A stretch of 64,000 nt of DNA, from NCBI GenBank assembly GCA_950097015.1, contig CATNEN010000002.1:4092001-4156000 (forward strand), given 5' to 3'. The notes beneath the pieces are model-generated. The model was not told the origin of the DNA. It saw only the letters and a list, made by a program, of their open reading frames with translations, and did not search any database. How positions within the stretch are numbered: the stretch's first letter is position 1; each line of letters opens with the position of its first letter. Both the position numbers and the translations under genes were made by a program. Of this stretch, positions 976-45,780 are shown one piece after another. Source of the stretch: Macrostomum hystrix (Eukaryota; Animalia; Platyhelminthes).

Positions 976-1230
976 AATGTCTATCGTTTTGAGTTAATTT
1001 TATTAACCTGTTAAGTTGAGATTGACTTAGAAGTTAAAACGGTTCTAAAACTGCTGTTACTTATCTGTTTATCTAGAGTAGTTCTGGCCATAGAAATTTG
1101 CAAATGTCTTCAAGATCTATCTTTTTTAGCCATACTCAAACGACAGTTTTGTGTAGGAGAAAAAGAGACTCAAAGTGCAAAAACCAGTTGCTTGACTGAG
1201 TGGCTAGTCTGCAATTTGCAACTCTTTCAA

Positions 1231-2646
1231 GCGAAGCATGAACGACGAAACACGTGAGCGAAACACAAACGACGAAACACGTGAGCGAAGCATGAACGAC
1301 GAAACACGTGAGCGAAACACAAACGACGAAACACGTGAGCGAAACACAAACGACGAAACACTTAAGCGAAACACAAACGACGAAACACGTGAGCGAAGCA
1401 TGAACGACGAAACACGTGAGCGAAACAAAAACGACGAAACACGTGAGCGAAGCATGAACGACGAAACACTTAAGCGAAACAAAAACGACGAAACACTTAA
1501 GCGAAACACAAACGACGAAACACTTGAGCGAAGCATGAACGACGAAACACGTGAGCGAAACAAAAACGACGAAACACTTAAGCGAAACACAAACGACGAA
1601 ACACTTGAGCGAAGCATGAACGACGAAACACTTAAGCGAAACAAAAACGACGAAACACTTAAGCGAAACACAAACGACGAAACACGTGAGCGAAGCATGA
1701 ACGACGAAACACGTGAGCGAAACAAAAACGACGAAACACGTGAGCGAAGCATGAACGACGAAACACTTAAGCGAAACACAAACGACGAAACACGTGAGCG
1801 AAACACAAACGACGAAACACGTGAGCGAAGCATGAACGACGAAAGACGTGAGCGAAACAAAAACGACGAAACACTTAAGCGAAACACAAACGACGAAACA
1901 CTTGAGCGAAGCATGAACGACGAAACACTTAAGCGAAACAAAAACGACGAAACACTTAAGCGAAACACAAACGACGAAACACGTGAGCGAAGCATGAACG
2001 ACGAAACACGTGAGCGAAACACAAACGACGAAACACGTGAGCGAAACACAAACGACGAAACATTTGAGCGAAGCATGAACGACGAAACACGTGAGCGAAA
2101 CACAAAAGACGAAACACGTGAGCGAAACACAAACGACGAAACACTTAAGCGAAACACAAACGACGAAACACGTGAGCGAAGCATGAACGACGAAACACGT
2201 GAGCGAAACACAAACGACGAAACACGTGAGCGAAACACAAACGACGAAAAATTTGAGCGAAGCATGAACGACGAAACACGTGAGCGAAACACAAAAGACG
2301 AAACACGTGAGCGAAACACAAACGACGAAACACTTAAGCGAAACACAAACGACGAAACACGTGAGCGAAGCATGAACGACGAAACGCGTAAGCGAAACAC
2401 TAACGACGAAACACCCGAGCGAAGCATGAACGACGAAACACTTAAGCAAAACAAAAACGACGAAACACGTGAGCGAAACACAAACGACGAAACATTTGAG
2501 CGAAGCTTGAACGACGAAACACGTAAGCGAAACACAAACGACGAAACACTTGAGAGAAACACAAACGACGAAACACTTGAGCGAAGCATGAACGACGAAA
2601 CACTTGAGCGAAACACAAACGACGAAACACTTGAGCGAAGCATGAA
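1231..2646 (+). repeat. 27-bp tandem array (e.g. ATGAACGACGAAACACGTGAGCGAAGC), open in one + frame (NDETRERNT/NDETRERSM repeats)
   Basis: About 52 units. The unit is 9 codons long, which explains the long ORFs on both strands. Confidence 0.95.
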
Positions 2647-4795
2647 GCCCGTGATAGTTATCCGGACCTGCCAGGCATGCAGCAAAATGTACTTTACTGA
2701 AACTGGCACCTTCAAGCTTGACGAGCAGGCCAAGAGAAAGAAAAGAGATTTGAAGAAGCCTGAGGCAGAGTCCGGCGACAAGGATTGTGCTGAGTCACAG
2801 GAACAGTCAGTCCCCAATAATTTCCCGAAAATCACCTCGGCTAGACTCCGCTTGGCAGATTGGAGTGTGTTTTCTGATCAGCAAGATGTGCTCACTCCGC
2901 AGCAAGCGGAGGGTGTGATCTGCAATTGGCTGCAGAACACAACTGCCTGCATGAAACTACAGGGTGGACAGCTGGAAAACTCGGAGAACGAGGGGCTCTA
3001 TGGCAAGATCATTTTCGACCATCTCGGTAGGTTCAAGCACGAAGTCTACATTGTACATTGCTGATTGGCTGCCGATGGAGTGAAAGGGGGAGTGAAAGGG
3101 GAGTGAAAGGGGTTCTAAAATGGTGAGAAGTTTAACGAAATTTTTCTAACTCTGTCAATTTCAGGTGAGATTTTTGATTTTGATATTTGCCACCTGGACA
3201 TCAAAATGCTCGGCTTGGGCTTTGATAACTGGATGAACACATTGGCTAGCGGAGAGCTCCTTCTCGACATTGTGAACTGCTTAATCAGCAATTGCCATCG
3301 CGACGATAATCCTGATTTGGATATCCAGATAAATGTGAGTTTGCATTAAATATCTTTAAGGTAAAGGATTGTGAGCAGTGAGCAGCGGTATCCTGAGCAG
3401 TGAGCAGTGGTATCCTGAGCAGTGAGCAGTGGTATCCTGAGCAGTGAGCAGTGGTATCCTGAGCAGTGAGCAGTGGTATCCTGAGCAGTGAGCAGTGGTA
3501 TCCTGAGCAGTGAGCAGTGGTATCCTGAGCAGTGAGCAGTGGTATCCTGAGCAGTGAGCAGTGGTATCCTGAGCAGTGAGCAGTGGTATCCTGAGCAGTG
3601 AGCAGTGGTATCCTGAGCAGTGAGCAGTGGTATCCTGAGCAGTGAGCAGTGGTATCCTGAGCAGTGAGCAGTGGTATCCTGAGCAGTGAGCAGTGGTATC
3701 CTGAGCAGTGAGCAGTGGTATCCTGAGCAGTGAGCAGTGGTATCCTGAGCAGTGAGCAGTGGTATCCTGAGCAGTGAGCAGTGGTATCCTGAGCAGTGAG
3801 CAGTGGTATCCTGAGCAGTGAGCAGTGGTATCCTGAGCAGTGAGCAGTGGTATCCTGAGCAGTTGTCATGAATTTATTCCACCTGGAATGCAGATTGTTC
3901 CATCGCAAAAGCTGACCGTGAGACGAATGCTGGACACGGCACCCAACAAGCATGCCGTTTGTTCTTTCCTGCTGAACCACAACTGCCTTATTGAGAAATT
4001 TCTAGACCCAATTCTGGCCATGATTCGCGACATTGGCCTGCCACCGCCAGGCACGAAACCCGGCACTGTTGGCAACATTCGGCAAGCCCTGCACTTATTG
4101 AGGCCTGTGGGGCACAACCTTCTACACTGCACCCATGTATCAAAGGTAAGCGGACATCTATTTACCTCTAGAAGTAGAAGGGTGGGAACCTATGTTTCTT
4201 AGAAAATGTTTATTGGGCTGATTTTCGCCGATAAATCTGCAAATTTAGTGACTGTGTTTGATCGGCACTAAACGTTTGACACTAGTTTCCTTTTTTTATC
4301 ATTATTTTTAAAACATCGATTTCTCTGCGTGCCCTCTAATTGTGCCTAAAAGCGCATTATTCTCCTAAAACAGCAAAACCCACTCGGCAACTCGCTTCCC
4401 ATTTTCTGATCTGTAATTTAGTTAAACTGTTAGTATATTTTGATGAACTCTAAGCATATCTGAGCACATTACTCAGCGCCATTGACACCACCAAGTAGGA
4501 ATGGACATGGAAGGCCCTGATGCTGCTGGTGATGATCCTCATGAGCCTGGTTGGAGATCTGGACTCCGAGCTTCAGCCACTGTTCTGCAGCCTCACTGGT
4601 GAGTTCTGTCCCGATCATCTCATTGTGCCAGAGCTGCAACAAGCGATGAGGGCCATCCGGGAGTCGAACCCAGTGCAGCTGAGAAAGCAGTTTTCCGCGC
4701 AGGAGCTTCTGTGGGCGCTGCCACGGTGGCGCGTGTTGAAGCAAGGAGCGATCGAGTTCAACAGCGTGCTGTACAGTGACTTTGGATCGGATTGA
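1232..4795 (+). CDS. Orphan multi-exon protein of unknown family; possibly disrupted or mis-assembled
   Basis: Exon-like blocks: about 1232/2641-3026 (donor CTCG|GTAGGT, phase 1), about 3166-3335 (TTTCAG|GT GAG, GEIFDFDICHLDIK..), about 3867-4145 (CHEFIPPG..HVSK|GTAAGC) and 4499-4795 (TAG|EWTWKALMLL..SD*). Junctions 1-2 and 3-4 are in phase; junction 2-3 is not. No recognisable domain. Confidence 0.5.
3373..3863. repeat. 22-bp intronic tandem array (GAGCAGTGAGCAGTGGTATCCT)n
   Basis: About 22 essentially identical units abutting the next exon. Confidence 0.97.
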
Positions 4796-6066: not shown

Positions 6067-9000
6067 TTACTCATTGCGACTAGTGAGCCTCACAACGCCC
6101 CGGTCGCCGTCGAGTTCAACAGCGTCGCCAGTCTTAAACGTGGATGTCACCTGTTTGGCCCCGACCACGCAGGGAATGCCGAATTCGCGAGCCACCACGG
6201 CACCGTGCGACAGCAGGCCGCCCTTCTCCGTCACGAGGCCGCTGATGAGCGGGAAGTACGGCGTCCAGCCCACATCCGTGTACGGAACAATCAGAATGTC
6301 GCCCTTCTTAATCTGGGCAGCGTCTTGGAGGCTGCAGATGACCCGGGCCTGCCCGGACACGAAGCCGCGGCTGACCGGCATTCCGGAGACGCTCAGCGCT
6401 TCGACGCTGTCCGCGGTTCGGCCGGCTGGCGAACGTGGGCGCTCCTGATCCGCTAGTAGACCGAATCGCGGGTTGCCCTTGACTAGCTCGGGCAGGTGAA
6501 GGGCGTTCTGGCGTGGCAGAGCAAGCCGGCGTCTCAAAGCCTAGCGAAGTGAATTAGGCATTAGAAGTATTAAATTAGTGCTAGGTTAGCGATGATCTTG
6601 CAGCTGCATGCTCTGCGCACTGATGCATCACTGACGCGCTGCCAACGAAGTGGCGATTCCGAGCTGACCTCAGGGACACTCTAACAGAGGAGTGTACTCC
6701 AGCCTGAATTCTATTGCTAATTCTGTAAATTATTTCACTCACCTTCTTGACAAGGGCGGCCGTGACTTTTCTGTCAACGAGCAAGCCGAGCTCCCGATGA
6801 GTGAAGAAGTAGACCAGATCTGAGTCCGGCACCAGCTCCTCCTTGACCAGCAGTTGGCCCAGGCGTCTATAGCCCTCCTTCATGGCATCGACCATACGGA
6901 TGGAGATGGCCTTGCCCCATTCCCGGCTGGCCACGCCTCTCCTGGCCATTGGAATCAGTGCCTTCACAATGCGACGCGTCAAAGGACTACGCAGCTCGAG
7001 CTGCTCCACAACCTCGTCGATGCTCAGCGCCTCCTTGGCTTCGCGCTCCAATGATCCTGCAGCGATTGTGGCCTGCATCACTGACACAACCTTCTCTGGC
7101 GCTGCGCGCCAGGATAGTTCGCGGAATTCAGCCTCTCGAATGCAGCGAAAACCGTGCCGGTTGATGAAGCCGCGAAAACTCTCGCCAGCAGTGCCGCTCT
7201 CGTGAGACAGCAACCAGTTGGCTGCTTCCTTTGGCGTCATGGCCAGGAAGGCTGAGCAATTAGGAGACTTGGACAGGTCGACAGACAGATTGTGCAGGGC
7301 TGTCGGCACGTCGGCGCTGTAGACATTGTCGCAGTTGGAGAGGCAGAGTGCCAGCTTGCTGAATGTCTTTTCGTTTAGGCCGAACTGTTCATTGAAAATG
7401 TTCACCAGGACCATGCTGTTGACAGCGGACTTGCTAGTGTTAATGATTGTGTCGCACCAGCACTGGGCATAGTCTGGCATGCGAGCGTCGAGCTCCAGGT
7501 ACTGCTCCTTGGCAGTGTACTGCGGTAGCGCGTGGTAGCCGTCCAGGAACTTTCTCTCCCAGGCCTGAGTGAGCTTACTTGACTGCCAGATGACTGCCAT
7601 ATCGCAGATCGCGTTCCACACCTTATCCACCAGGTTGGCCTCGCCGTCCATGTAGCGCCGCAGGTCGTCTCTAGTCGGCTCGTCGAGAGTTCGGCCGAGC
7701 AGAGCGATACAAGCCATGTCGAATTTGCCCAGAAGCGACATTACCTCTGAGCCCAGGCCCAGTTCCATCATGTTGATGAGCAGGTGGTTGGCACTGCAAC
7801 CCAGGCCAGACATTGGCCGGCCAATCTCTGGGATGATGCCGGACTTCGCCGCCTTGTACTTCGTGATACTCCAGTCGACAGCCCGACCGAACGTACTCAA
7901 AGTCAACGGTGTTAGAGCACCGGGACTCATCTCGCCAATATTGGCCGTGGTCATCCAGCCCTCCTTGTAGCTGAACGAGCTGTCAAACTCGTGCATTATG
8001 TCATCTGCTGTTTCCGGACCCATCGCGGTGACTGGACGCACCTGAAGCAGGTGAATCGACTCATTCACCAGCGCGAATTCAACGTCCACTGGAGCTCCAT
8101 AGCGCTTTTCGAGCTCCTCGCCGAGCTCAGCTAGCGCTAGTACTCGCTGGTCCGACAGGCAGCTGATCTTTTCGTCGCTGTGTCTGGTCTCCAGGCCTCC
8201 TGACTCGCCGACCTGCATCACTTCGGATTTTTCCCCCAGCCTGCGCTCCTCGATCGCCTTGTAACCGTCCGGGAATCGGCGCACGGTGAAGGTGTCGGGC
8301 GTCACTAATCCTGACACGACGCTCTCTCCGAGGCCAAAGTTTGCTTCGATCTTCATCACGCTTGAGCAACCGCTGATGGGATCCTGGCTGAAAAGCACAC
8401 CTGCGGCAGTAGCTGGCACCATCTCCTGAACCACCACCGCCATGCTGGCGTCAACGCCCAGCCCGCCACTCTGCCGGTACTGAACTGCTCGATGGGCGAA
8501 CAGCGACGCCCAGCATTCAATGACTTTGCTCGGCAGCTGCTCCCGATTCACACCGAGGAACGTCTCCATCTGGCCGGCGCTGGACGCGCTCGAGCCGTCT
8601 TCGCTAACGCCAGACGAGCGTACGGCAAAACGAACGCCAGTGGAGCCGCTAAAAATTCTATCGACAGTCTTTGTTACAGCCTCCAAGACGGGTGCAGGCA
8701 GGGTGGTAGCGGTGAAAGCTTCCGTCAATGATTTGCATGCCGGTTCAAGCAACGCCTCATCTCCAGAGGTCGCAGTCGCTCTCAAAGCTTGAATGCCCTG
8801 TCTCAGAGAGGAATTAGCTTGAATAAATTGCCGATAAGAGTTTGTCGTCACGACAAAGCCTTTCGGAACTAGAACGTCGCTGCTTCCGCCCTCGCTATTG
8901 AAGATTGCCGTAGCAACAGCCAGCTGAGAGCCTTTGCCTCCAGTCAGGGTTCTCACTCGGCAGTCTTGCTGGTCAAGGTCGACAACAAGAACTTCTTGGT

Positions 9001-10631
9001 TGTTGGGCACATCCGGCACTATCGGCATGGGTAGTGAGGCCTCGGGAGCGCCCTCGAGTGGGCTGTGATGCCAGTAACAGTACTCAGTGATGCCCCATCC
9101 GCGAATACCGTTCACTGTGAATTCGGTGAATCTCTCGAACAGCACACAGCTGGCAGACTGAACGTATAGCGGAATGTTCTCACCGGCCCGCACCTCAACC
9201 TTATAGTCCTTGCCGTTGGCAATGAGTCGCACCTGATAGTTCTTCGGCGGTTCGGTGATTTCGCCCTTCTCCCACAGATTGAAGTCATGAGCGTCCACTG
9301 CGCACTTCTTGCCGTAGGGCAGGTAGATGTAGCCGTACTTCACGTGGGTTGTAGTCTGTGGAATCGACACGGAGCCGAAGCTAAAGAAGCTGCCGTTCTC
9401 AAGGTAGCCAAAGTGGGCAGCGTAGCGATAATATTGTCGCCAGTTGCGCAGACCTGCACAGTTAATTGGATTTATTTAACTGAAATATAGAATAACTCTT
9501 ACGACATAAGCGTCAAGAAAAGTAACGAGACTTAAAGACAAAACCGGCAATCTCCTACCGTAGGAGTGATCCCGATAGGCGCTCATATTGAGATCGTAGC
9601 GCACGTCGCCGACACTCATCTCTCCCGTGATGACGCCCCATTGTTCCAGGTGAACCTGCTCTTCGTTGCGCTTCAGCTTGGCGAAGAACGCCGAGCTCCA
9701 CGCCTCTCTGGCCAGAAACTCGGCCGTAATCTTCGGACTAAGGTCGGTCTTTGAGTCAAACGGATTCACAGAAGCCCGGAATTTGGCTCGGAGGTTCACC
9801 ATCACGTAGTCGTCAAGATTGTGTGACGCTTCCGCCGGCTGCGGCTCCAGCTGAGCTGCGATACCCCGCTTCATCAGGCCGTTATAACGGAGGCTCCAGT
9901 AGGTCATCGGCTCATCGCAGCTGATGGAGAATCCGCCCGCTGACCATGTGTCGGGATGACTGTTGGTCACATGTGTGTTCGGCTGCACCGGGTGCTCCAG
10001 AATAGTGCCGTCCGGCATCCGTATGAGGAACCAGAGCTCAGCTACTCGGTCTGGACGCCTCGCTAGCCGCACAACAATAGCCGGTTTCTCTGACTCGAGC
10101 TCGCCGCCGTAAAAGTACACGGAGTCGATTGACTGCGGGCGTTTGAGGATAAGACCTTCGCGGCTTGAAAACATTGGCTTTTGTTACATGCTCTACTATT
10201 TTATACGATCAATGCGTACGTCGCTTCTAGTCGGGGTACCCAGGAGTGCAACCTAACTCATATCCTACAATAAAAGTCATGCGCTTTTATGCGCTTGGTT
10301 GCAGGAGGCAGCGGAACCTTGGTGAAAGGCGATCCCCCAAACTCACATCCTTGTCATTCTGATCCAACGGTTGTGGCTTCTCGGACTCGTCCCATTTGTT
10401 GAGCAGATCGCGGTCCCAGACTAGCACAGGCTTCTGCCGCCTCTGCCGCCAGGCCCTCAGCCAGAGCAGGCAGTACATCAGCCATTTCTTCAGGCTAAAG
10501 AATTCGCCACCGATAGAGTAGTAGCCGCAGTGCTTCAGCTTGACCGAGCGTCGGTTCCTGAGGTTCTTGCGCAACAGGTGCGTCATCCCCAGCAGAATAA
10601 ACAGGTAGAAAACCAAAGTTGTTATCCACAT
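6067..10631 (-). CDS. PEP-synthase/pyruvate-phosphate-dikinase-family phosphotransferase (rifampicin phosphotransferase/YvkC/PigC-like) with N-terminal TM anchor and an extra N-terminal domain
   Basis: Four phase-consistent exons: 10631-10347, 10132-9559, 9453-6743, 6540-6067. ATP-grasp motifs TGGKG, FAVRSS..ED..AS.AGQ.ET, VVQEMV, EANFGLGESVVSG..TPD, DVEFA..LLQVRPVT. Phospho-His domain TDVGWTPYF..GGLLSHGAVVAREFGIPCVVG. Confidence 0.92.
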
Positions 10632-11358: not shown

Positions 11359-12461
11359 TAGTTATAAAGGAAGAGTAGAATAAAATTGGGTGAGAATATG
11401 GTAAGAAGGGTGAAAACATGATAAGACACATCGGGATATGGTGAGATGGATGAAAAAAAGTACCAAAACAAATTGTCTTGCTGTGACTGTACAGAGCCCT
11501 TGTGTCTTGTTTTGCATTTTATTTATGCATTGTGTTGAAAAGAAGTAGCTTTTAAAGTATTATTGTTGCTCACTTAGATGGTGTCGAAATTCGTAATGTT
11601 TCGCCCTCGCCAGGCCAAGTAACATGTGATTTCAGCTCGTAGCAATAGTTAACCATTCTGATTGACCAAAAAGGCAACAAAATAAGTAAAATTTATGAAG
11701 TGCAATCAGATAATTTTTACAGTGTCAAAAACTAAGAATTATTTTATCAATTTTCCAGAACAAAATAGAAATAATAAAATAATTTTGTTTAAACAGCATG
11801 AGAGTTACAAACGGCCCAGAATGGGCTTTGATATTCGAATTGCGTAACATGCTACTACATCGCTTCATCGCTAGTAGTATAGGATAAGACGTTACTAAAA
11901 TTGTGGCAGTCAAAAAGCGTAATGAGTTCATATACGAGCATTGGACTAGTAGAATAATCATCAAAAAGTTCTTGGGTTGTTTATTAAGCAAAGAACAACA
12001 ATAAAAATGTTATAATTTACATCTGTCAGATTCAATCAAACGGCGATGGGGCCGATAACTTGCCGAATTTGAACTTCGTGACGTTTTCGAGCGAATACGT
12101 CCCAAAATAAGTTATCAGAGAATCAACAACTAGGAATGATTTTAAGGCTATTTTGGTTTTTTAACAAGTATTTGCTTTTCTGTAAATGTTAGCACGATTT
12201 AAAATTTATAGCAAAGAGTTCCTTTATTACTAATGCAACTGTAAATATTATCGTAGACAAAAGCATCGACGTGAGAGCCTTATTGGATCCGTACTGTTTC
12301 GTATCCCATGGGGTTCTGCTGCTTAAGTCGTCGTACGGGACCAACAACAATATCAAAAAGAATATCGGACTATTTGATAATAAGTTACACAAATATGAAT
12401 AGACAAGCAAGTTTCAAGAAGTGCAAATTCCACATAATAAGCAATCGGATCAAGCCCAGAT

Positions 12462-15400
12462 CTAGAAGGCATCCTCTTCGGCTCCGTTTTCCCCAGTTGA
12501 GAGCTGCAGTCGATCTTCGACCTCTGCATCGACAGCGGATCCGTTAAGACAGTATGCATCGTCCCTGTTATCGCTGACGTTTTCAGGATATTCGCTGGGC
12601 ACCAGCTGCAACGCGCCGCAGCCTTCGCTGCCGATGGAGTTGTTCGACTGGTCCATGTCGATCTCCTGCTCGTCGTTGGCATCGGGATCAACAAGACGAA
12701 GGCGCTTGGCTGTGCCGGCGGGAATGCCCCAGTCTTCCGGCTCGCAGGGAAGTAGCTCAGAATCATCACTGTGTACAAGGGGATCAGGCGGTAGGGAATC
12801 ATAGAATCTCTCGGAATCTCCCGACTCTCTGAATCTCCCGACTCTCTGAATCTCCCGACTCTCTGAATCTCCCGACTCTCTGAATCTCCCGACTCTCTGA
12901 ATCTCCCAATTCTCTGAATCTCCCAATTCTCTGAATCTCCCAATTCTCTGAATCTCCTTACTATCTTTATCTCCCGACTCCCTGAATCTCCCAATTCTCT
13001 GAATCTCCCGACTCTCTGAATCTCCCAATTCTCTGAATCTCCCAATTCTCTGAATCTCCCGACTCTCTGAATCTCCCAATTCTCTGAATCTCCTTACTAT
13101 CTTTATCTCCCGACTCTCTGAATCTCCCAATTCTCTGAATCTCCCGACTCTCTGAATCTCCCGACTCTCTGAATCTCCCGACTCTCTGAATCTCCTTACT
13201 ATCTTTATCTCCCGACTCTCTGAATCTCCCGATTCTCTGAATCTCCCAATTCTCTGAATCTCCCGACTCTCTGAATCTCCCGACTCTCTGAATCTCCCGA
13301 CTCTCTGAATCTCCCGACTCTCTGAATCTCCCGACTCTCTGAATCTCCCAATTCTCTGAATCTCCCGACTCTCTGAATCTCCCAATTCTCTGAATCTCCC
13401 GACTCTCTGAATCTCCCGACTCTCTGAATCTCCCAATTCTCTGAATCTCCCAATTCTCTGAATCTCCCGACTCTCTGAATCTCCCGACTCTCTGAATCTC
13501 CCGACTCTCTGAATCTCCCAATTCTCTGAATCTCCCAATTCTCTGAATCTCCCAATTCTCTGAATCTCCCGACTCTCTGAATCTCCCGACTCTCTGAATC
13601 TCCCAATTCTCTGAATCTCCCGACTCTCTGAATCTCCCGACTCTCTGAATCTCCCGACTCTCTGAATCTCCCGACTCTCTGAATCTCCCGACTCTCTGAA
13701 TCTCCCGACTCTCTGAATCTCCCGACTCTCTGAATCTCCCGACATTCTTAATCCCGCGGATTCTCTGCTGGCTCACCGAAGATCTTCTTTGTATCGCATT
13801 GCCAGCTCCTCCTTGCCTAGCACACTTCCGTCCTGTAAAACGTTTATCATAAGTTTTGTTACTCGTCTGATCGATCTTACTTACAGTAGGGTAGGCAAAC
13901 CGTAAATAATCTACTTGCACTTACATCCGTAGCGTCAGCCGCACTGCCAGGAGATCCAAAACCGCACAGCTCCGCCTTCACTGAGGACCTGGGGTCAACG
14001 AAAATAGAGGCGGATTGATTAGAGAGAAACTGGAGGAAGGCCGTTTGCTGTTTTTCTTAACTCGCGGAGCGAGCAGCGTTGTTTACGATAGACGCGGGAT
14101 GAGACAGTTTGTACTTTTAACTGGCCAAGCGAAATTTCTTTACCTTGTTTTCTGACGGGGCTGTCTATGTATTTGTGTGCATCCCACGCCGTGTTTCTCG
14201 TCCCGTCAACATACGATCTTGCTCTCGTGGCCCCTGCCTCTCTCTCTCTCTCTCTCGTCTCCCTGTTTTGACTCCTCTTCCCTCACCTCCCGTGGGTGTT
14301 TGTGTTGTCCCAGTCAACAACACGCGTCACAAGGGACATGCAGCCTTGTGTGTGGACTGTGGATGCCATGCAGCTGCCTCCCACCCGCCCTGTTTCTGCC
14401 TGTGCATATTAATGTATACAATTATAAATAGTTGCTAACCGATATGTACATTTAGTTTGTCTCTAAGGCGTCAACCAGGTATCCAGTTCATTATTATACC
14501 CTTTCCTTTCTAAACAGAAGGAATGAAGGCTGAGCTAATCCTAGGCAAGAAAACACAGGTAGGTAATTTACAGAGTGCAAGAATTCAAGAATTAGAATTA
14601 ACAGCATCAGCCATGAATGACATTGACCATGATGTTCAGAGTTTGTTTTATTAATATGATCACATGATATATGATAACCTGTTTATGCGTTTAATCCCTT
14701 TTTAGCAACTATCTCTCTATTTTAAACTGTCAATTGGGATTCGAATTAGCAATCCAATCAGTTTAAATTAGTTAATCAAGATCTTCTAAAGACGCAATGA
14801 CCACTTCAATTACGACTGGCCCAGCTGCGGTCAAGAATTGGGTTGAGGCTTTTATTTAGTGCACTGGTGCGATCTAAATTACAATACTAGGACCCCCTTT
14901 GGATTATTGGTTGATGGTTTTGCGGAGGGTAATTGCGCATAACTCGGTACAACTTTGTCTCAGTTTACAGTTGACAAGTGCGCCTCATTATTTCTCACTA
15001 ACGGGTAGAAATTTCCGGAATTTCCAGGTATTGGAACTTACAAAGAATTTCCGCCGCTGCCGCCTCCGCCACCGCCACTGCCGCCGCTGGCTCCTCGTTG
15101 TAGTCGCCGTCGATAGAACTCAGCTTCATCAACAGTCCAAACAGCGCCTTTGACATTTTCGACACGCATGAAGCACTTGTGAAGTGACAGGTTATGACGC
15201 ACTGCGTTCTGTTGGGATCAAAGCAGTTTTGTGAGATTTCAAGTGTTATAATATATGCATGGCATGACTATGAATAGCAAATTCGTTTTATGAAGACAAT
15301 GCGGAATTGCAGCAGCATCTTAACCAATTAGTCTTTTGATAAGTCTTTGTCAGGTCAAATGATATTTTCTCCAATCAAGATATCCAAGTAAATATAAACA

Positions 15401-18400
15401 CAATGTTCTTTGGGTTCCAGTCTAGTTACCACTGATTTAAATAATTGGATGCATGCCATGCCTGTACTGAATTGGGATCATTTTTTGCCAATCTTGATAC
15501 AGAAAAGCGCTATCGAACTATAGCGAAACGTGCAGCAAAGTTAGATGGTCTTTGTTCCAATAGTTAGAGGATGACTAAACGGACGTAAAATCATTGAGGC
15601 TGGGTCTTTGTGCTTTATTGTAAGTGCTACTAAATAATAATTATCAACTTATAAAGCAGGGAGATTATATTTACTGCCATTAAATTGTCGCAGCCTACAG
15701 CCTATGTATTTTTGTGTTACAGCAAATGTAAATAATCTGCTGTTTAAGTATATGGTTAATGGCTTGTGTCGTTCACAATATCATTTTGTCTCATTGTTGC
15801 ATTTAGTATTTTAACTTGGCACATAGTCGTTGTTCTTTGTTCCTTATTCTCCAGTTCAGTAGTATCTTACTTATCGAATAACACTGATTAGACAATCTTC
15901 GAATATTCAAATTAAAATTCAAATTTGCTATTGCATCGCTTTTTGAATTTCCAATTTGCATCTAAATTAAAGGAGGTTAAATTTACTATTCCCACCTTAT
16001 TAGCGCAGCTGGATCACACAGTGACGTCTTATTGTTTATCTAAACATGCGAGTGTAAATAAATGACGGCCTTGATTAATTTTGAAAGACATTTCGTCCAA
16101 AGCCCATTACGCAATAGCACAACAAACAGATTCAGGCATTGACACAATGCAAACAATGCTTGTTTGAGCTATGGAGAAACTGCAATTGAGACAGCTCCTA
16201 GCAATGCAGCCAGCCACAATCAAAATATTGGCCATCCAATATTTTAGGCATAGTCTTTCCATTCCAGTGTAAATATAGATACTTCAGGCTGATCCATGTG
16301 TATAGTGTTTCATATTAATAGAATCGAAACTGGGATCGTGCAGCTGGGGGACGGTCTTAACTGATTGAGGTCGTGTTTGGTTTTGTTAGTGTATATATAA
16401 ATATATTTTTGCTTGATTTGGCCTCTGAGTGTTGGGTAGGCAAGCTGAAAGCTCTCAGAGAGTGGAACATTTACCCAAACAGCGCATGCAAGCTTATGAA
16501 GCTAAATAAGCACTAGAGGGGAGGCCTTGTTCCTTCGCTCGTTCCAAAACCGGAACCAACGCTCTCGGCTCTCGTAGCCAGCCCACCTAGTGGCTTGAAT
16601 GTCTGGAGAATCAACAAAACCTCAGTGCAGGGCCAGAGTAAACAACCACACGCACACACAGAAACACAAACACACTCTGACACAGCACAGACAGCACACT
16701 GCCGTGGGGAAGCTGACAGTTCTTCCTCCAACTACTATTCCGTTCCGTCTTCCCTGATTCCAGCCACCTCACGCCGTGCACCCCTTAAACTGCTGCTGCA
16801 ACTTCCTGCCTCGCTGTTTGTTTGTCGTGCCCAAACAAGCGCTCTACCGCGAGGGGTAGACGGGGGGAGTGGGAGACGAATGGAAGCTCCCTTCCCTATG
16901 GTGTCTGCGTTACTAAATGCGTTGGAGAGGACGGAATGAAAGAAAGAGAAAATATGAAGAATTAGAAGAGAAAAAGTAGCTAAATTAAGTTTTCTTACCA
17001 TGCCGCTGACTACGTTCAATGCGAAATGAACGTAAAACAATGCAGAGTAAGAAAGAAAGAAGACAGAAATACAGACACAATAATAAAGAAGAGGATTGAG
17101 GAAGTTAAGGTGGCAGAATTCAGCAGCAGACGGACCTTTAACTCCAATGGATTCGTTGAAAGTTTGTAGGCTTTAAAGTCAAAGAGGGTCTGATGCGTAC
17201 GATAATATAAATGAGCTTAAAAATGAGTTTAGAAAGATACAATAATGAAAGGTGACGATTGTGTAAATAAATTCCCCTTTGTCTCAGTTACCTGAGGAAC
17301 ATTCACTGGGATTGGCTCACAATTGCTAATAAGTTATGGTCATTAATCTCTAGAAACTCACCTTCCAGGTTGCTTCGTTGCGTCTGAAGAATGCAAAGCT
17401 GCGCTGAAACCAAATGTAGATCTCGTTCAGGGTCAGCTGGCGATTCGGTGACTCAATTATTGCCTGAATAAGAAAATGTGTAAAACAGGTTAAAAAAATT
17501 AGGGAAGGGCTTTTTAATCGAAAATTAAGTTCAGCAAAAGTTGTTTTAAAGGGGGACACATCAAAAGCAGATCAAAGGTCTCTTTAAAATAAATTTTACA
17601 ATCGTTAATCCCTGATTAGCTTACCTGTCTAATAAGTGAGGCGTAGGTGAAAGGCGGTCGAATATCGTTTTTATTGTAGAAGTCACGATTCTTATGAAAA
17701 TCTAAAACAGCAATTTGATTGTTAGAAAATCAGATTTATTTGATGGATAATACACGTGCAAATAAAAACTTCAATTAATCTCATTTTACCAGCATTTTAA
17801 AGCATAGTTAATAACTCATAATCTATTATTCTATTAAGAGTTTTTAGGAAGATATCTGGGAGAGTGGTTTTAATCTTTGCCTTTCTTTAAATGTTCAACT
17901 CTTTGTTAGTTAGCAAACAGAAAGTGCCGTTTAGCTCCTATTTTAATGCTTAATTTAGTGGATCATAATTCAATTTCCTCGTGTATCCAAGACTTGGAAA
18001 TTAGAAAAAATAGCAGAAGATTGCGAACCTCCACCGAGCGGCAGTCCCGCTTTGTCAGGCAATCGACCTCGCCTAGATGCAGCTGCCGCTGCTGTTGCTG
18101 CAGCTGCGGCGGCCGCTGTCGAAGCAATAGAGGTCAATGTCGATGTCGGAACAGCCGCAGACGACGCCGCTGTCGCTGCTGTTGCCACCGGTGTCATCAT
18201 TGAGATAGTGGCGATAGGCTGCACCATCGATGTAGTTGTGACGGCAGACGAGGCTACTGATGCTGCCGCCGCAGCAGCCGCTGCTGCTGCAGCACCGTTC
18301 TGAACCAAACCGCCAATAGGAGAGGCTACAGCAGCAGCCAGCAATGCCGAGTTAAAATAAGTCTGTTGCTGCTGCTGCTGCTGCTGGAGATTCTGATGGT

Positions 18401-19623
18401 GGTTCTGCTGAAGAGATTCGCGCTGCGATATGGTCGTCTGATGGCACGAGGCTGTTGCGGCGGCTGCTGCGGCGGCTGCGGCTGCAGCAGAAGCCTCTCG
18501 AATATGTTTCGTCATAGCAGCCAGTCTGGATCGTTCATCATTAAGCGCAGCCTCCATGGCCCGAACGCAAGCTGACTGCGATCTGAGCTGGCCAACTGAC
18601 GAGTTGTCAAGTGGATGCTCGCGCGACATGTGCGAGGCCAGGTCAGACTGCAGCGGCAGTGAGTTCGGCGATTATAAATCAATAAAATATTATTTTTAGC
18701 TGAGGCAATAGCTTAATAGAGTTTCCAACTAAACCAGAAGGCATCGCTTACCGGGGAGACGCTCCTGTAGGCGCAGCACGGCCACCGGCACTGCCCTGTG
18801 CCACCGGTGGTGAGCGAATCCGCCGGACAGGCGTTTCGCACCAGACCCGACGCCTCCTGCAGTGCTGCAGCCGCTGCTTCCTGCAGGCTGGCGGCGCTGG
18901 CCTGCATCAGCTGCAGACTACGCAGCTTCCACAGAGCCTCCGGGTCATACAAGCAGCCCCAGCCACCCTGACTTAGCATAAGAGCTGCTGCGGCTGCTGA
19001 TGACAACTCTGCTGGAAGGTCGGTCAGGGCAGAAATCTGCTGCTGTTGCTGCTGCTGCCAAAGTTGAATCACTTGGCGTTGCAGTTCCTGCTGATTCGCT
19101 GCAGCTTGAAATTGCTGCTGCTGCTGCTGCTGTTTTGGCACCTGCATGGCAGAATATAGATTATTATCCATAATTATTTTCTTAATTATATAATTTCCAT
19201 CATTATTAGATTATTTTCTAGATAACCCTGAGGTTGTTTCTGCCTAAGGTCTAGTCCTAATATGGTCAGTACGCTTCTGCTCACATTTTATTTCAATGCG
19301 TGTTTTTTAAGTCAACCAACACACTTTACTGAAAATCATTACTGCTGTCCGCGGATATACCAGCCAGCTCTTGTCAGGCAAAGCCAAACAATTTCATTGC
19401 TAGCTAGTCAGCTGAGTGTATCTATCTACCAGCTGATATGCTGGTGGATAAAAATACATCAGTTATTGGGGCCGACTAGTTCGCTGTATGTCTAGTTTCT
19501 TCTTACCTGAAGGCAGTCTGGACTAACGGAGCTAGACGCAGATGACTTGACAGACAAATTTACTGAATGCTGCTGCTGCTGCTGCTGAAGATGATGCTGA
19601 CTGAGGTCCATAATCAGGTGCAT
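12462..19623 (-). CDS. FoxP: Forkhead box P transcription factor (about 645 aa as modelled)
   Basis: Phase-consistent exons 19623-19507, 19141-18752, 18647-18029, 17701-17625, 17463-17362, 15208-15042, 13988-13925, 13832-13777, 12807-12462. PolyQ tracts; C2H2 finger [15 protein letters not shown] with adjacent zipper; forkhead [12 protein letters not shown]|[20 protein letters not shown]|[28 protein letters not shown]. The N-terminus may extend further upstream. Confidence 0.95.
12808..13742. repeat. 16-bp tandem array (TCTCTGAATCTCCCGA)n filling the last FoxP intron
   Basis: About 58 units; source of the spurious [16 protein letters not shown] ORFs. Confidence 0.97.
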
Positions 19624-45264: not shown

Positions 45265-45780
45265 TCGCGAAATTTTGAAGGTTTCAAAAGTAGAAATTTA
45301 TTTTTATTCGGCGATAGGATCTTGCCTAGGCACGCAATATTCTGGCATTTAATGAAAGTTGAATAATCTATGGGAAAATTCTCCCACTGTGTTCACCTGC
45401 CCGCTGGTTCTGTTAATCTTGCCGGAGATTTTTCGCTAGAAACCCTCGCCTATTCAACGCTTCATGATTTTCAATTTCCGACCGACTGACTGCTCCGATT
45501 GGCTGCGGGCTAACAGCCAATGAGAGACGCGCTTCGATTGACTAAAATATATTGGACCATGTTTGGTAGGAGCTCTGGTATTTTGTTAAACAGCACTAGT
45601 CTGATTAAGCAGTTCTTTCATGATTCAAGCAATGATTGATTTATGGAGGCCGATGTCAATGCATAGGAAAATCAAATCAGGGCACATTGCCCACAACCAG
45701 GACGGCTATATTTAGCCGAACCGCTGCAGTGCTGGGCTAGCGAATGAACTGCCTGCTCTAATCTCTATGATCATCAGCTA

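What the first reader, a model, noticed from the sequence alone, without database searches (positions are those of the whole stretch)
6067..10631. Intron-bearing animal gene for a rifampicin-phosphotransferase/PEP-synthase-like enzyme with a membrane anchor and extra N-terminal domain
Seen: complete ATP-grasp, central and phospho-His modules with intact catalytic motifs (SHGAVVARE); an N-terminal hydrophobic helix (WITTLVFYLFILLG); an additional aromatic-rich domain of about 300 aa (DSVYFYG..EQWG..RDHSYGLRNW); and three spliceosomal introns, which argue against bacterial contamination. Established: this domain order (ATP-grasp, substrate domain, C-terminal His domain) is that of bacterial RPH, YvkC and PigC rather than classical PPDK. 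Similar uncharacterised proteins occur patchily in invertebrates, and I know of no demonstrated substrate for them. Inference: a membrane-bound small-molecule dikinase (xenobiotic, pigment or lipid chemistry), possibly of ancient horizontal origin. The N-terminal domain may be a CrtC/AttH-like beta-barrel.
Basis: partly seen in the sequence, partly recalled or inferred. Interest (0 to 1): 0.7.

Follow-up and report, generated by a model that had tools for sequence, protein, structure and literature searches.

The report
Animal kinase–phosphate-lyase fusion enzyme gene
This flatworm gene, shared by most invertebrate groups, encodes a membrane-anchored enzyme that fuses a bacterial-type ATP-driven small-molecule kinase to a domain related to a bacterial phosphate-eliminating steroid lyase, which points to an unrecognised ATP-powered dehydration step in animal lipid chemistry.

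Summary
A four-exon, three-intron (all GT-AG) minus-strand gene at 10631-6067 encodes about 1347 aa. It has an N-terminal membrane helix, a roughly 320-aa beta domain, and a complete RPH-type dikinase (ATP-grasp, central "Rph_4th" domain, C-terminal phospho-His domain) with every catalytic residue of Listeria RPH conserved. One correction: exon 2 starts at 10132, not at the ATG at 10174.

New here:
- The N-domain has the AttH/CrtC fold (Z 22-25). Its only sequence-level match among solved structures is 25-phosphosteroid lyase (E 1.4e-5), and they share the RD(H/R)S(Y/W)G motif.
- In at least 21 prokaryotic loci (Asgard archaea and six bacterial phyla), a homologue of the N-domain sits directly upstream of a dikinase, often overlapping it by 4 bp.
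- In both trees the animal sequences fall with these prokaryotic pairs. The animal gene is therefore a fused, intron-invaded descendant of a prokaryotic two-gene cassette.
- Mycobacteria fuse the same lyase-like domain to an unrelated APH/EcKL kinase.

Best reading (about 50%): a bifunctional ATP-dependent dehydratase that phosphorylates a lipophilic alcohol and then eliminates the phosphate. The substrate is unknown.

The family is pan-bilaterian and annotated, but I found no published function. The scan had not noted this gene before.

The parts
10347..10631 (-). Exon 1 (95 codons, starts at ATG 10631). It holds the membrane anchor, a basic stretch, an amphipathic helix and an acidic linker ending NDKD.
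   Evidence: It is 82% identical to residues 1-94 of M. lignano P0001. The donor is AAGGAT|GTGAGT. An in-frame stop lies upstream of the ATG.
10572..10628 (-). Predicted transmembrane helix, residues 2-20 (WITTLVFYLFILLGMTHLL). The following RKNLRNRRSVKLKH stretch predicts an N-out, C-in-cytosol orientation.
   Evidence: Mean Kyte-Doolittle value 1.87, with 7 K/R and no D/E in the next 16 residues. A hydrophobic N-terminal helix is present in nearly all 40 aligned animal homologues. AF2 models helix 2-33.
10133..10346 (-). Intron 1, 214 nt, GT-AG, phase 0.
   Evidence: M. lignano has a 522-nt intron at the same position that cannot be aligned.
9559..10132 (-). Exon 2. It encodes the first lobe (DUF7065-like) of the AttH/25-phosphosteroid-lyase-like domain, with the motifs IDSVYFYG and HLEQWG and the first half of RDHSYG.
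   Evidence: 87% identical to P0001 residues 95-283. The motifs are shared with the prokaryotic partner proteins and with 25-PSL.
9559..9574 (-). Codons for R-D-H-S-Y and the first base of G in the RDHSYG motif. The Asp codon is at 9571-9569. The motif continues after intron 2 at 9453-9440 (G-LRNW).
   Evidence: The motif aligns with RDRSWGVR of 25-phosphosteroid lyase. The product-complex entry 9G4C carries Asn at this Asp. The motif is invariant in 22 prokaryotic partner proteins and kept in the non-arthropod animals.
9454..9558 (-). Intron 2, 105 nt, GT-AG, phase 1, 34% GC.
   Evidence: M. lignano has an intron at the same position.
6743..9453 (-). Exon 3 (903 codons plus 2 bases). It encodes the second lobe of the N-domain, the ATP-grasp domain and the central substrate domain.
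   Evidence: 85% identical to P0001 over 100% of its length.
9077..9415 (-). Second lobe of the N-domain (DUF7064-like), with the motif FTVNGIRGWGITEY.
   Evidence: Pfam DUF7064 scores E 0.0056 and 17.4 bits here, below the 24.7 cut-off. The amphioxus orthologue scores 36.5 bits, above the cut-off. Fold match, motif.
7985..8947 (-). ATP-grasp (PPDK_N) domain. The GGKG lysine codon is at 8935-8933.
   Evidence: PF01326 E 7e-73. The equivalents of RPH-Lm K22, R117, E297, Q309 and R311 are conserved and invariant in 35 aligned sequences.
6743..7984 (-). Central helical substrate-binding domain (RPH 'RIF-binding'-type, PF27448 Rph_4th), including REWGK, which matches RPH-Lm R666-E667-...-K670.
   Evidence: phmmer aligns residues 726-890 to RPH-Lm 537-713. 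PF27448 is precomputed in the orthologues. The AF2 model aligns to 5HV1 over about 950 columns. R687 and E688 are invariant.
6541..6742 (-). Intron 3, 202 nt, GT-AG, phase 0.
   Evidence: M. lignano has a 205-nt intron at the same position that cannot be aligned.
6067..6540 (-). Exon 4 (157 codons plus stop TAA). It encodes a linker and the phospho-histidine swivel domain. The catalytic His codon is at 6207-6205 (LLSHGAVVARE).
   Evidence: PF00391 E 6e-26. It aligns to RPH-Lm 764-865, with the His matching His825. 76% identical to the C-terminus of P0001.

Best explanation
What is shown: the gene encodes a single-pass, membrane-anchored, two-enzyme fusion that descends from a prokaryotic two-gene cassette.

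What is inferred: the C-terminal 900 residues work like rifampicin phosphotransferase. The ATP-grasp domain loads the beta-phosphate of ATP onto the swivelling histidine (ATP gives AMP + Pi). The His domain then carries the phosphate to the central helical domain, where it is transferred to a hydroxyl group of a bound lipophilic small molecule.

Also inferred: the N-terminal AttH-fold domain, a homologue of 25-phosphosteroid lyase, takes the phosphoester and eliminates phosphate, giving a C=C bond. The net reaction is an ATP-driven, irreversible dehydration of an otherwise unreactive alcohol, probably a tertiary or isoprenoid-type one.

The N-terminal helix would hold the enzyme on the cytosolic face of a membrane, probably the ER, where such substrates dissolve. 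The substrate is not known. Sterol or isoprenoid side-chain alcohols are the leading guess, by analogy with every characterised member of the N-domain's superfamily.
For: 1. Dikinase machinery is intact.
- PPDK_N scores E 7e-73 and PEP-utilizers E 6e-26.
- The best solved relative is RPH-Lm.
- K22, R117, E297, Q309, R311, R666, E667, K670 and H825 of RPH-Lm are all conserved, and all but the K670 equivalent (at least 90%) are invariant across animals, cassette partners and bacterial RPH-type enzymes. Their roles are taken from PMC4844700.

2. N-domain identity.
- The AF2 model has pLDDT 90.
- Z is 24.8 to AttH 2ICH, 23.3 to kievitone hydratase and 22 to 25-PSL. Foldseek's top hit is 25-PSL at E 1e-13.
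- A profile of the domain finds 25-PSL as the only significant solved sequence (E 1.4e-5). The match covers D..YF, (Y/F).Q.G, RD.S(Y/W)G.R and FT.NG..G.G..EF. The product-complex entry differs from wild type by D to N in that motif.

3. Functional linkage.
- In 19 loci from six bacterial phyla and Heimdallarchaea, the N-domain homologue is followed on the same strand by an 800-aa dikinase, with a gap under 60 bp or a 4-bp overlap, and no other conserved neighbour.
- Two further clade members chosen from the tree also have it. Three RPH-type enzymes outside the clade do not.

4. Both halves give congruent trees. Animals are monophyletic (SH-aLRT 98 and 93) and fall inside the cassette clade (100).

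5. Independent fusion evidence. Mycolicibacterium fuses an EcKL/APH kinase to DUF7065+DUF7064. In Sterolibacterium, a separate 'phosphotransferase family' kinase (25-HSK) feeds 25-PSL (PMC8449060).

6. Thermodynamic sense. Tertiary phosphoesters have a transfer potential at or above that of ATP, so the simple kinase reaction is reversible (PMC8449060). Dikinase chemistry (AMP + Pi) would make it irreversible. This last step is inference.
Against: - No activity, substrate or expression data exist for any member.
- The role of the motif Asp in 25-PSL is inferred only from the D-to-N variant in PDB 9G4C. The structure paper was not in the library.
- Similarity to 25-PSL is remote (13-16% identity). 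The hydratases and the non-acid/base pericyclases of the same fold score equally well by Z.
- All arthropod sequences and most asteroid sequences have lost the Asp yet keep the domain, so at least there it does something else.
- RPH-type enzymes such as PigC/HapC can already couple phosphorylation to C-O cleavage without a partner.
- No conserved third gene hints at a pathway.
- Membrane topology is predicted only.
Confidence: 0.5

Rival explanations
1. Kinase only. The protein is a membrane-bound small-molecule O-phosphotransferase, used for xenobiotic or metabolite inactivation as in RPH or flavonoid phosphate synthetase. The AttH-fold domain serves only as a lipocalin-like pocket that captures or delivers the hydrophobic substrate or product.
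For: - The catalytic set of the dikinase is complete.
- The cassette is self-contained and mobile across phyla, like a resistance gene.
- Pericyclases with the same fold do no acid/base chemistry.
- Arthropods and asteroids lost the motif Asp but keep the domain and all dikinase residues.
Against: - RDHSYG(K/x)RDW, HYEQ.G and the other motifs shared with 25-PSL are invariant in all 22 prokaryotic partner proteins and conserved from flatworm to manta ray. That is more than a passive binding pocket needs.
- The same domain is fused to an unrelated kinase in mycobacteria.
Confidence: 0.22
2. Hydratase first. The N-domain hydrates an isoprenoid-type double bond to a tertiary alcohol, as CrtC, kievitone hydratase and AttH do. 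The dikinase then phosphorylates that alcohol. This pulls an unfavourable hydration forward and yields a phospho-lipid as the end product.
For: - Fold matches to AttH and kievitone hydratase are the top Z scores.
- These enzymes make tertiary alcohols (PMC5805349, PMC12402844, bioRxiv 10.1101/2025.10.20.683597).
- The gene order, N-domain before kinase, fits the reaction order.
Against: - At sequence level only the lyase, not the hydratases, is detected.
- The tertiary phosphoester would be a very high-energy, labile end product (PMC8449060).
Confidence: 0.12
3. Phosphate as a leaving group for something other than elimination. After phosphorylation, the N-domain generates a carbocation that is cyclised or captured by a nucleophile. 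This would be terpene-cyclase-like, tocopherol-cyclase-like or PigC-like condensation.
For: - Tocopherol cyclase Pfam hits occur in related Atlas clusters.
- Pericyclases share the fold.
- PigC/HapC use phosphorylation to drive a condensation (PMC13534948).
Against: There is no specific evidence for it. The closest relative by sequence performs a plain elimination.
Confidence: 0.1
4. It is a conventional PEP synthase (pyruvate, water dikinase), as many database names say.
For: Database names say so. NCBIfam PEP-synthase models hit the ATP-grasp and His domains.
Against: - All NCBIfam scores are far below the cut-offs, for example 230 against 598.
- There is no PEP-utilizers_C TIM barrel.
- The His domain is C-terminal.
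- True PEP synthases fall outside in the tree.
- RPH enzymes do not use pyruvate (PMC4844700).
Confidence: 0.01
5. It is bacterial contamination or a very recent transfer, not a functional animal gene.
For: The coding GC (54-64%) is above the flanks (about 43%).
Against: - Three spliceosomal introns are present.
- The four-exon structure is conserved with M. lignano, with diverged introns.
- The neighbours are animal genes.
- Orthologues across Bilateria give a tree that roughly follows species relationships.
Confidence: 0.01

Closest known systems
Rifampicin phosphotransferase RPH-Lm (Listeria monocytogenes; PDB 5FBS/5FBT/5FBU, 5HV1)
   Same: - It has the same three-domain order: ATP-grasp, helical substrate domain, C-terminal swivel His.
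- All mutationally defined residues are conserved (K22, R117, R666, E667, K670, H825).
- The predicted fold aligns over about 950 columns at E 1e-43.
- The expected chemistry is therefore ATP + R-OH giving AMP + Pi + R-O-phosphate.
   Different: - Identity is only 22-31%. The NCBIfam RPH equivalog score is 250 against a cut-off of 999.
- The central domain is barely alignable by sequence (12.9 bits).
- RPH has no membrane anchor, no AttH-fold domain and no partner gene.
- Animals have no obvious reason to inactivate rifamycins.
25-phosphosteroid lyase (25-PSL) with 25-hydroxysteroid kinase (25-HSK) of Sterolibacterium denitrificans (PDB 9FZN, 9G2I, 9G4C; PMC8449060)
   Same: - The N-domain is the only solved-structure relative detectable by sequence (E 1.4e-5). 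It shares four motifs, including RD.S(Y/W)G.R, and the same fold at Z 22.
- The logic is the same: a kinase makes a phosphoester and the AttH-fold enzyme eliminates phosphate, giving an ATP-dependent dehydration.
   Different: - There the kinase is a separate 43-kDa 'phosphotransferase family' enzyme that makes ADP and is fully reversible, and its gene is not next to the lyase gene.
- Here the kinase is an RPH-type dikinase (AMP + Pi), fused in one chain and membrane-anchored.
- Identity to 25-PSL is only 13-16%.
Prokaryotic DUF7064/DUF7065 + RPH-type dikinase two-gene cassette (e.g. Breznakiella homolactica L003, Ca. Heimdallarchaeum L016/L018); as far as I could find, undescribed
   Same: - Both halves are the closest relatives of the two halves of the animal protein, in the same order.
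- The N-domain motifs are identical (RDHSYG.R.W, HYEQ.G).
- Identity is 28-31% over more than 600 aa of the dikinase, including the central domain.
   Different: - These are two separate, translationally coupled ORFs with no membrane helix and no introns.
- The hosts are mostly anaerobes from guts and sediments.
- Their function is equally unknown.
Mycobacterial EcKL/APH kinase-DUF7065-DUF7064 fusion proteins (L022-L024)
   Same: A small-molecule kinase is fused to the same lyase-like domain. This supports a general kinase-plus-phosphate-lyase partnership.
   Different: The kinase fold is unrelated. The kinase is N-terminal rather than C-terminal. The DUF7064 part is the outgroup in the N-domain tree.
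AttH / CrtC / kievitone hydratase and fungal decalin-forming pericyclases (2ICH, 7A0T, Fsa2, Phm7, CghA)
   Same: They share the two-lobe beta fold at Z 22-25 over about 270 residues. All act on lipophilic isoprenoid or polyketide substrates. The hydratases interconvert C=C and tertiary C-OH.
   Different: - No sequence-level similarity was detected.
- They need no ATP or kinase partner.
- The pericyclases do no acid/base chemistry.
ACAD10/ACAD11 and class III/IV lanthipeptide synthetases
   Same: These are animal (ACAD10/11) or bacterial single polypeptides that phosphorylate a hydroxyl and then eliminate the phosphate to make a double bond (PMC11342911, PMC13504147). They are a precedent for the proposed logic.
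   Different: Both the kinase and the eliminating domains have unrelated folds, and the substrates differ (4-hydroxyacyl-CoA; Ser/Thr in peptides).

Membership tests
RPH-type (RPH/YvkC/PigC) PEP-utilising dikinases | N-terminal ATP-grasp (PPDK_N) with the nucleotide-binding Lys and Arg (RPH-Lm K22, R117) and E297/Q309/R311 | tested here: met
   PF01326 E 7e-73. The residues align and are invariant in 35 sequences.
RPH-type (RPH/YvkC/PigC) PEP-utilising dikinases | Central helical substrate domain (PF27448 Rph_4th) in place of a PEP/pyruvate TIM barrel, with the R666-E667...K670 phosphate network | tested here: met
   PF27448 is precomputed in orthologue P0001 and in bacterial relatives. REWGK aligns to REYPK. 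The AF2 model aligns to 5HV1 along its whole length. No PF02896 hit.
RPH-type (RPH/YvkC/PigC) PEP-utilising dikinases | C-terminal swivel domain with the catalytic histidine | tested here: met
   PF00391 E 6e-26. The His in LLSHGAVVARE aligns to RPH-Lm His825.
Rifamycin-inactivating phosphotransferase (functional equivalog) | Score above the NCBIfam equivalog cut-off (NF041857, 999 bits); rifamycin 21-OH phosphorylation | tested here: not met
   The score is 250.5 bits for exon 3 and 111.7 for exon 4. In the tree it lies outside the clade holding annotated RPHs. Activity cannot be tested here.
Prodigiosin ligase PigC/RedH | Score above the NCBIfam equivalog cut-offs (1300/1350 bits) | tested here: not met
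   The scores are 203 and 185 bits.
PEP synthase (pyruvate, water dikinase) | Central His domain followed by a C-terminal PEP-utilizers_C TIM barrel; score above NF005057/TIGR01418 cut-offs | tested here: not met
   There is no PF02896 hit and the His domain is C-terminal. The scores are 230 against 598 and 228 against 740. True PEP synthases serve as the outgroup in the trees.
AttH/CrtC/25-PSL superfamily (Pfam DUF7065 + DUF7064) | Two-lobe beta fold | tested here: met
   The AF2 model of orthologue residues 1-450 has pLDDT 90. Z is 24.8 to 2ICH, 23.3 to 7A0Q and 22.0 to 9G2I over 265-282 residues; the next unrelated hit has Z 8.8.
AttH/CrtC/25-PSL superfamily (Pfam DUF7065 + DUF7064) | Pfam DUF7064 hit above the gathering score | tested here: inconclusive
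   The window's exon 3 scores 17.4 bits against 24.7. The amphioxus orthologue scores 36.5 bits, and partner protein P0122 scores 28.9 bits. The exons were not joined, so the whole domain was never scored for the window itself.
25-phosphosteroid lyase-like phosphate lyases | Sequence-level homology to 25-PSL, including the RD.S(W/Y)G.R motif with the Asp that is replaced in the 9G4C complex | tested here: met
   Profile A2 against PDB sequences gives 9FZN at E 1.4e-5 with three aligned motif blocks. The window carries RDHSYG|LRNW.
25-phosphosteroid lyase-like phosphate lyases | Phosphate elimination from a tertiary phosphoester | not testable with these tools
   This needs an enzyme assay. The catalytic role of the Asp is my inference from the PDB variant, because the paper was not in the library.
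DUF7064/65 + dikinase cassette lineage | Both halves fall in the clade of genes that occur as adjacent pairs | tested here: met
   Dikinase tree: animals plus 18 cassette dikinases have SH-aLRT 100, and with four more cassette members also 100. N-domain tree: animals plus cassette have 99. Pairing was found in 21 of 21 clade members examined and in 0 of 3 outside.

The most novel reading that the evidence does not exclude
Bilaterian animals inherited, from a single ancient transfer of a prokaryotic two-gene cassette, a fused ER-membrane enzyme that carries out an ATP-dependent dehydration of sterol or isoprenoid tertiary alcohols. An example would be 25-hydroxysterols giving delta-24 or delta-25 sterols, or hydroxylated carotenoid or terpenoid end groups giving alkenes. 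This would be an oxygen-independent lipid-editing reaction not known in animal metabolism. It would be the metazoan counterpart of the 25-HSK/25-PSL step of anaerobic bacterial cholesterol degradation. In this reading, arthropods and starfish later converted the lyase half to another use.
Probability: 0.18. Interest if true: 0.88.

Novelty: new variant of a known kind. Interest (0 to 1): 0.72.

Why it matters
This 1300-aa enzyme family is present in most bilaterian phyla, often in several copies. It carries three misleading database names: PEP synthase, rifampicin phosphotransferase-like and PigC-like. I could find no demonstrated function for it.

This work makes three links. The extra domain is related to a phosphate-eliminating lyase whose structure was released only in 2026. 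The two halves form a translationally coupled gene pair in Asgard archaea and six bacterial phyla. The same lyase-like domain is fused independently to an unrelated kinase in mycobacteria.

Together these turn an orphan into a concrete, testable hypothesis: kinase plus phosphate lyase equals ATP-driven dehydratase. The predictions are specific. The Asp-to-Asn mutant should accumulate the phosphoester. One ATP should give AMP plus 2 Pi per alkene.

The finding also gives a clean case of an operon-to-fusion gene transfer into early animals. It defines a previously undescribed prokaryotic cassette whose soluble proteins are easier to assay than the animal enzyme. If the substrate is a sterol or isoprenoid, it would add a new reaction type to animal lipid metabolism.

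Tried and rejected
Comparative intron evidence was used instead.
- Word search with the N-domain alone found only two proteins. One of them, P0122, led to the cassette.
- The search for related loci with the 14-sequence alignment A2 failed for lack of a conserved stretch. A 5-sequence alignment worked.
- The first tree, with the mixture model, did not finish in two 300-s runs. I used LG+G4 quick searches, so support values are SH-aLRT only and should be read with that limit.
- In tree 1 the L028 row was a wrong-frame ORF (branch length 4.3, no Pfam hit). It was corrected in tree 2.
- The search for a conserved third gene around the cassette found none. A DUF1295/steroid-reductase-like gene next to one locus (L017) is a single case.
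- L020 and L021 (Bacteroidota) carry the N-domain homologue with no kinase nearby.
- Literature searches for animal members, for DUF7064/DUF7065/PF27448, for the M. lignano locus tag and for the 25-PSL structure paper gave nothing usable.
- The exhaustive protein search was not run. It was flagged as costly and returns no names. As a result, absence from non-bilaterian animals and other eukaryotes was not tested.
- Conventional PEP synthase and contamination were considered and rejected (see the rival explanations).
- I could not inspect model coordinates, so clustering of the motif residues around a pocket was not checked.

Full report
**Scope and constraints.** Each exon was searched by reference: window:10347-10631:-, 9560-10132:-, 6743-9451:- and 6070-6540:-. 

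- The best database hit of the 903-aa exon 3 is a 1344-aa hypothetical protein of Macrostomum lignano (P0001; 85% identity, 100% coverage). Exons 1, 2 and 4 match its residues 1-94, 95-283 and 1187-1343.
Exon 1 ends ...NDKD and exon 2 starts SIDSVYFYG, so the acceptor is cccgcag|TCA at 10133/10132. The ATG at 10174 is intronic.
- The resulting model has exons 10631-10347, 10132-9559, 9453-6743 and 6540-6067. Its introns are 214, 105 and 202 nt, all GT-AG. The total is 4044 nt, or 1347 aa.
- The M. lignano gene (L034) has the same four exons. Exon DNA is 77-80% identical, while introns 1 and 3 (522 and 205 nt there) do not align at all. This is the pattern expected of real exons and introns, and it stands in for the missing RNA data.
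- Neighbouring ORFs encode a FOXP coiled-coil domain and a Cys-loop channel membrane region. The gene therefore sits in ordinary animal DNA.
My data agree only so far as showing a congener of M. lignano.

**2. The C-terminal 900 residues are an RPH-type dikinase.**
- Pfam finds PPDK_N (E 7e-73) and PEP-utilizers (E 6e-26), and no PEP-utilizers_C.
- NCBIfam models for RPH, 'PRK06241' PEP-synthase-like proteins, PigC and RedH all hit, but far below their cut-offs. The protein is not an equivalog of any named enzyme.
- Among solved structures the best match is Listeria RPH, for the ATP-grasp domain (E 2e-50), for part of the central domain and for the His domain (E 1.5e-27).
- Read against the mutational study of RPH-Lm (PMC4844700), the equivalents of K22, R117, E297, Q309, R311, R666, E667, K670 and H825 are all present. 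All but the K670 equivalent, which is kept in at least 90% of sequences, are invariant in an alignment of 15 animal, 10 cassette and 10 other bacterial sequences.
- An AF2 model of the orthologue's residues 440-1344 (pLDDT 88) aligns to RPH-Lm over about 950 columns (E 1e-43). PEP synthase and PPDK match only through the ATP-grasp and His domains.
- The orthologues carry the newer Pfam family PF27448 ('Rph_4th') for the central domain, as bacterial RPH-type proteins do.

**3. The N-terminus.**
- Residues 2-20 are strongly hydrophobic (mean Kyte-Doolittle 1.87) and are followed by seven basic residues. This predicts a signal-anchor with the catalytic domains in the cytosol, where ATP is available.
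- A comparable helix heads nearly all 40 aligned animal homologues.

**4. The extra domain.**
- AF2 on the orthologue's residues 1-450 with 40 homologues gave a confident model (pLDDT 90, pTM 0.86). It shows three helices followed by a two-lobe beta domain (residues 95-411).
- Foldseek's best hits are 25-phosphosteroid lyase (9FZN/9G4C/9G2I, E 1e-13). Kievitone hydratase, AttH and the fungal decalin pericyclases follow.
- The second-look aligner gives Z 21.7-24.8 for all of these over 265-282 residues. The next, unrelated hit has Z 8.8.
- A sequence profile of the domain finds exactly one significant solved protein, 25-PSL (E 1.4e-5). It aligns three blocks: D..YF(N); (Y/F).Q.G...RD(H/R)S(Y/W)G.R; and FT(V/L)NG..G.G..EF.
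- The chain of the product complex 9G4C differs from the native chain by Asp to Asn inside RDRSWG. I take this as a sign that this Asp is catalytic. That is an inference, since the paper is not in the library. The window encodes RDHSYG|LRNW, split by intron 2.

**5. The two halves are a prokaryotic gene pair.**
- One of the two word-search hits for the N-domain, P0122 (358 aa, 28% identical), lies on a metagenomic contig. Its gene ends 5 bp before a 799-aa PPDK_N/Rph_4th/PEP-utilizers gene. That gene aligns with exon 3 at 30% identity over 660 residues, central domain included.
- A scan of one genome per prokaryotic species, using the motifs HQ.HYEQ and RDHSYG.RD, returned 26 loci.
- In 18 of them (L003-L019 and L028), the homologue is followed on the same strand by an 800-aa dikinase gene, with a gap under 60 bp or a 4-bp overlap. 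The hosts are:
  - Breznakiella and Treponema (Spirochaetota)
  - several Bacillota, including Christensenellaceae
  - an Actinomycetota MAG
  - Bacteroidales
  - Polyangiales
  - two complete Heimdallarchaeum chromosomes
- No other gene is conserved around the pair.
- Two Bacteroidota loci have the N-domain gene alone.
- The mycobacterial hits are 660-aa proteins in which an EcKL/APH kinase domain is fused to DUF7065+DUF7064. An Atlas fold search had also flagged this architecture.

**6. Phylogeny.** All trees are LG+G4 with SH-aLRT support only; the mixture-model runs did not finish.

Dikinase tree (97 rows; PEP-synthase ATP-grasp as outgroup):
- The 35 animal rows are monophyletic (98).
- Their sister is the clade of 18 cassette dikinases (100), and together they have support of 100.
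- The next branch out (100) holds L028 and three unnamed metagenomic proteins.
- I then looked up two of those three. Both have a DUF7064/65 gene upstream with a 4-bp overlap.
- Three RPH-type enzymes outside the clade, including one annotated as rifamycin-inactivating, have none.

N-domain tree:
- It has the same shape, down to the internal groupings. Animals have support of 93, the cassette 99 and the union 99, with L028 outside and the mycobacterial fusions as outgroup.

Conclusions from the trees:
- The two halves have travelled together.
- The animal gene is nested among prokaryotic pairs. The simplest history is one transfer of the pair into an early animal, followed by fusion, gain of a membrane helix and gain of introns.
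- The donor is unresolved.
- Within animals the trees roughly follow taxonomy. The top 120 hits include flatworm, annelids, molluscs, priapulid, all arthropod subphyla, echinoderms, hemichordates, amphioxus and a manta ray. I did not test non-bilaterians.

**7. Mechanism.**
- Shown: an intact RPH-type phosphotransfer apparatus; a 25-PSL-like domain with conserved motifs; and tight genetic coupling of the two in prokaryotes.
- Inferred: the dikinase phosphorylates a hydroxyl of a lipophilic molecule (ATP gives AMP + Pi), and the N-domain eliminates the phosphate to give an alkene.
- Precedent 1: Sterolibacterium dehydrates 25-hydroxysteroids this way, using a separate kinase and 25-PSL (PMC8449060, PMC11061730).
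- Precedent 2: mycobacteria fuse the lyase-like domain to that other kinase type.
- Precedent 3: ACAD10/11 and lanthipeptide synthetases are one-chain kinase-eliminases.
- The finding that a tertiary steroid phosphoester has a transfer potential at or above that of ATP, which makes 25-HSK fully reversible (PMC8449060), gives a reason why a dikinase would be a better partner. That reasoning is mine.

**8. Caveats.**
- The similarity to 25-PSL is remote.
- Hydratases and non-catalytic-acid pericyclases share the fold.
- Arthropods, most starfish and one unnamed sequence have lost the motif Asp (RQRRWG, KSRQSG and similar) while keeping all dikinase residues. The domain must therefore serve another role there.
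- The substrate is unknown, and no neighbour gene helps to identify it.
- I rate the dehydratase reading at about 0.5. The rivals are kinase-only with a binding domain at 0.22, hydratase-then-kinase at 0.12, and other leaving-group chemistry at 0.10.

**9. Novelty.** The protein family is already in databases under three different borrowed names, so the gene itself is not new. I found no paper on its function in eight full-text searches, and none on the prokaryotic cassette or on DUF7064/DUF7065. The combination of an RPH-type dikinase with a 25-PSL-like lyase, as an operon in prokaryotes and as a fusion in animals, is a new variant of the known kinase-plus-phosphate-lyase dehydration principle.

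Noticed in passing
L022:4492-6471, L023:4492-6471, L024 (Mycolicibacterium/Mycobacterium): These are 660-aa proteins that fuse an EcKL/APH small-molecule kinase domain (residues 40-287) to DUF7065+DUF7064. That is an independent kinase-to-25-PSL-like fusion, possibly a one-chain version of the Sterolibacterium 25-HSK/25-PSL pair.
   Followed up: partly
Alignment (animal homologues P0037-P0112): All arthropod sequences, most starfish sequences and the unnamed P0030 have lost the Asp of the RDHSYG motif (for example RQRRWG, KSRQSG, KERLIC). They keep every dikinase catalytic residue. In the N-domain tree the starfish sit with sea urchins, so the loss happened at least twice.
   Followed up: partly
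L017:10203-11084: In one Clostridia MAG, a DUF1295 / steroid 5-alpha-reductase-like membrane protein gene lies about 0.8 kb downstream of the cassette, with one unannotated 262-aa gene between them. This is a single-locus hint towards a lipid or isoprenoid substrate.
   Followed up: no
L020:3112-4200 and L021:226-1326 (Bacteroidota MAGs): These are close homologues of the cassette's N-domain protein, with all motifs intact, but no kinase gene lies within 6 kb. In L020 an SDR reductase and an acyltransferase lie upstream.
   Followed up: partly
window 17973-18629 (-): This ORF has a FOXP coiled-coil domain (E 3.5e-8) and is probably an exon of a FOXP-type transcription factor gene.
   Followed up: no
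window 26189-27007 (-): This ORF has the transmembrane region of a Cys-loop neurotransmitter-gated ion channel (E 1.3e-32).
   Followed up: no
window 1136-3064, both strands: Three long ORFs (437, 543 and 608 aa) overlap on opposite strands in a stretch with a strong A-over-T bias (AT skew 0.15-0.27). The 608-aa one has no Pfam hit. It may be a low-complexity or repeat-derived sequence.
   Followed up: no
window 12001-14000 and 42001-46000: These are stretches of strongly negative GC skew (-0.31, and -0.33 to -0.52). The first holds overlapping minus-strand ORFs (12353-13920) without Pfam hits. They remain unexplained.
   Followed up: no
P0023 (Mobula birostris): A manta ray carries a full-length, motif-intact member (1351 aa) that groups with amphioxus. 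The family therefore reached early vertebrates and was presumably lost in bony vertebrates. I saw no other vertebrate among the top 120 hits.
   Followed up: no
PDB 9GOJ: HpeI of Rhodococcus rhodochrous GD02 is a stand-alone ATP-grasp subunit and the next-best solved relative of the ATP-grasp domain. It may be another example of PEP-synthase-like enzymes that phosphorylate small-molecule hydroxyl groups, but that reading comes from my own memory and was not checked here.
   Followed up: no
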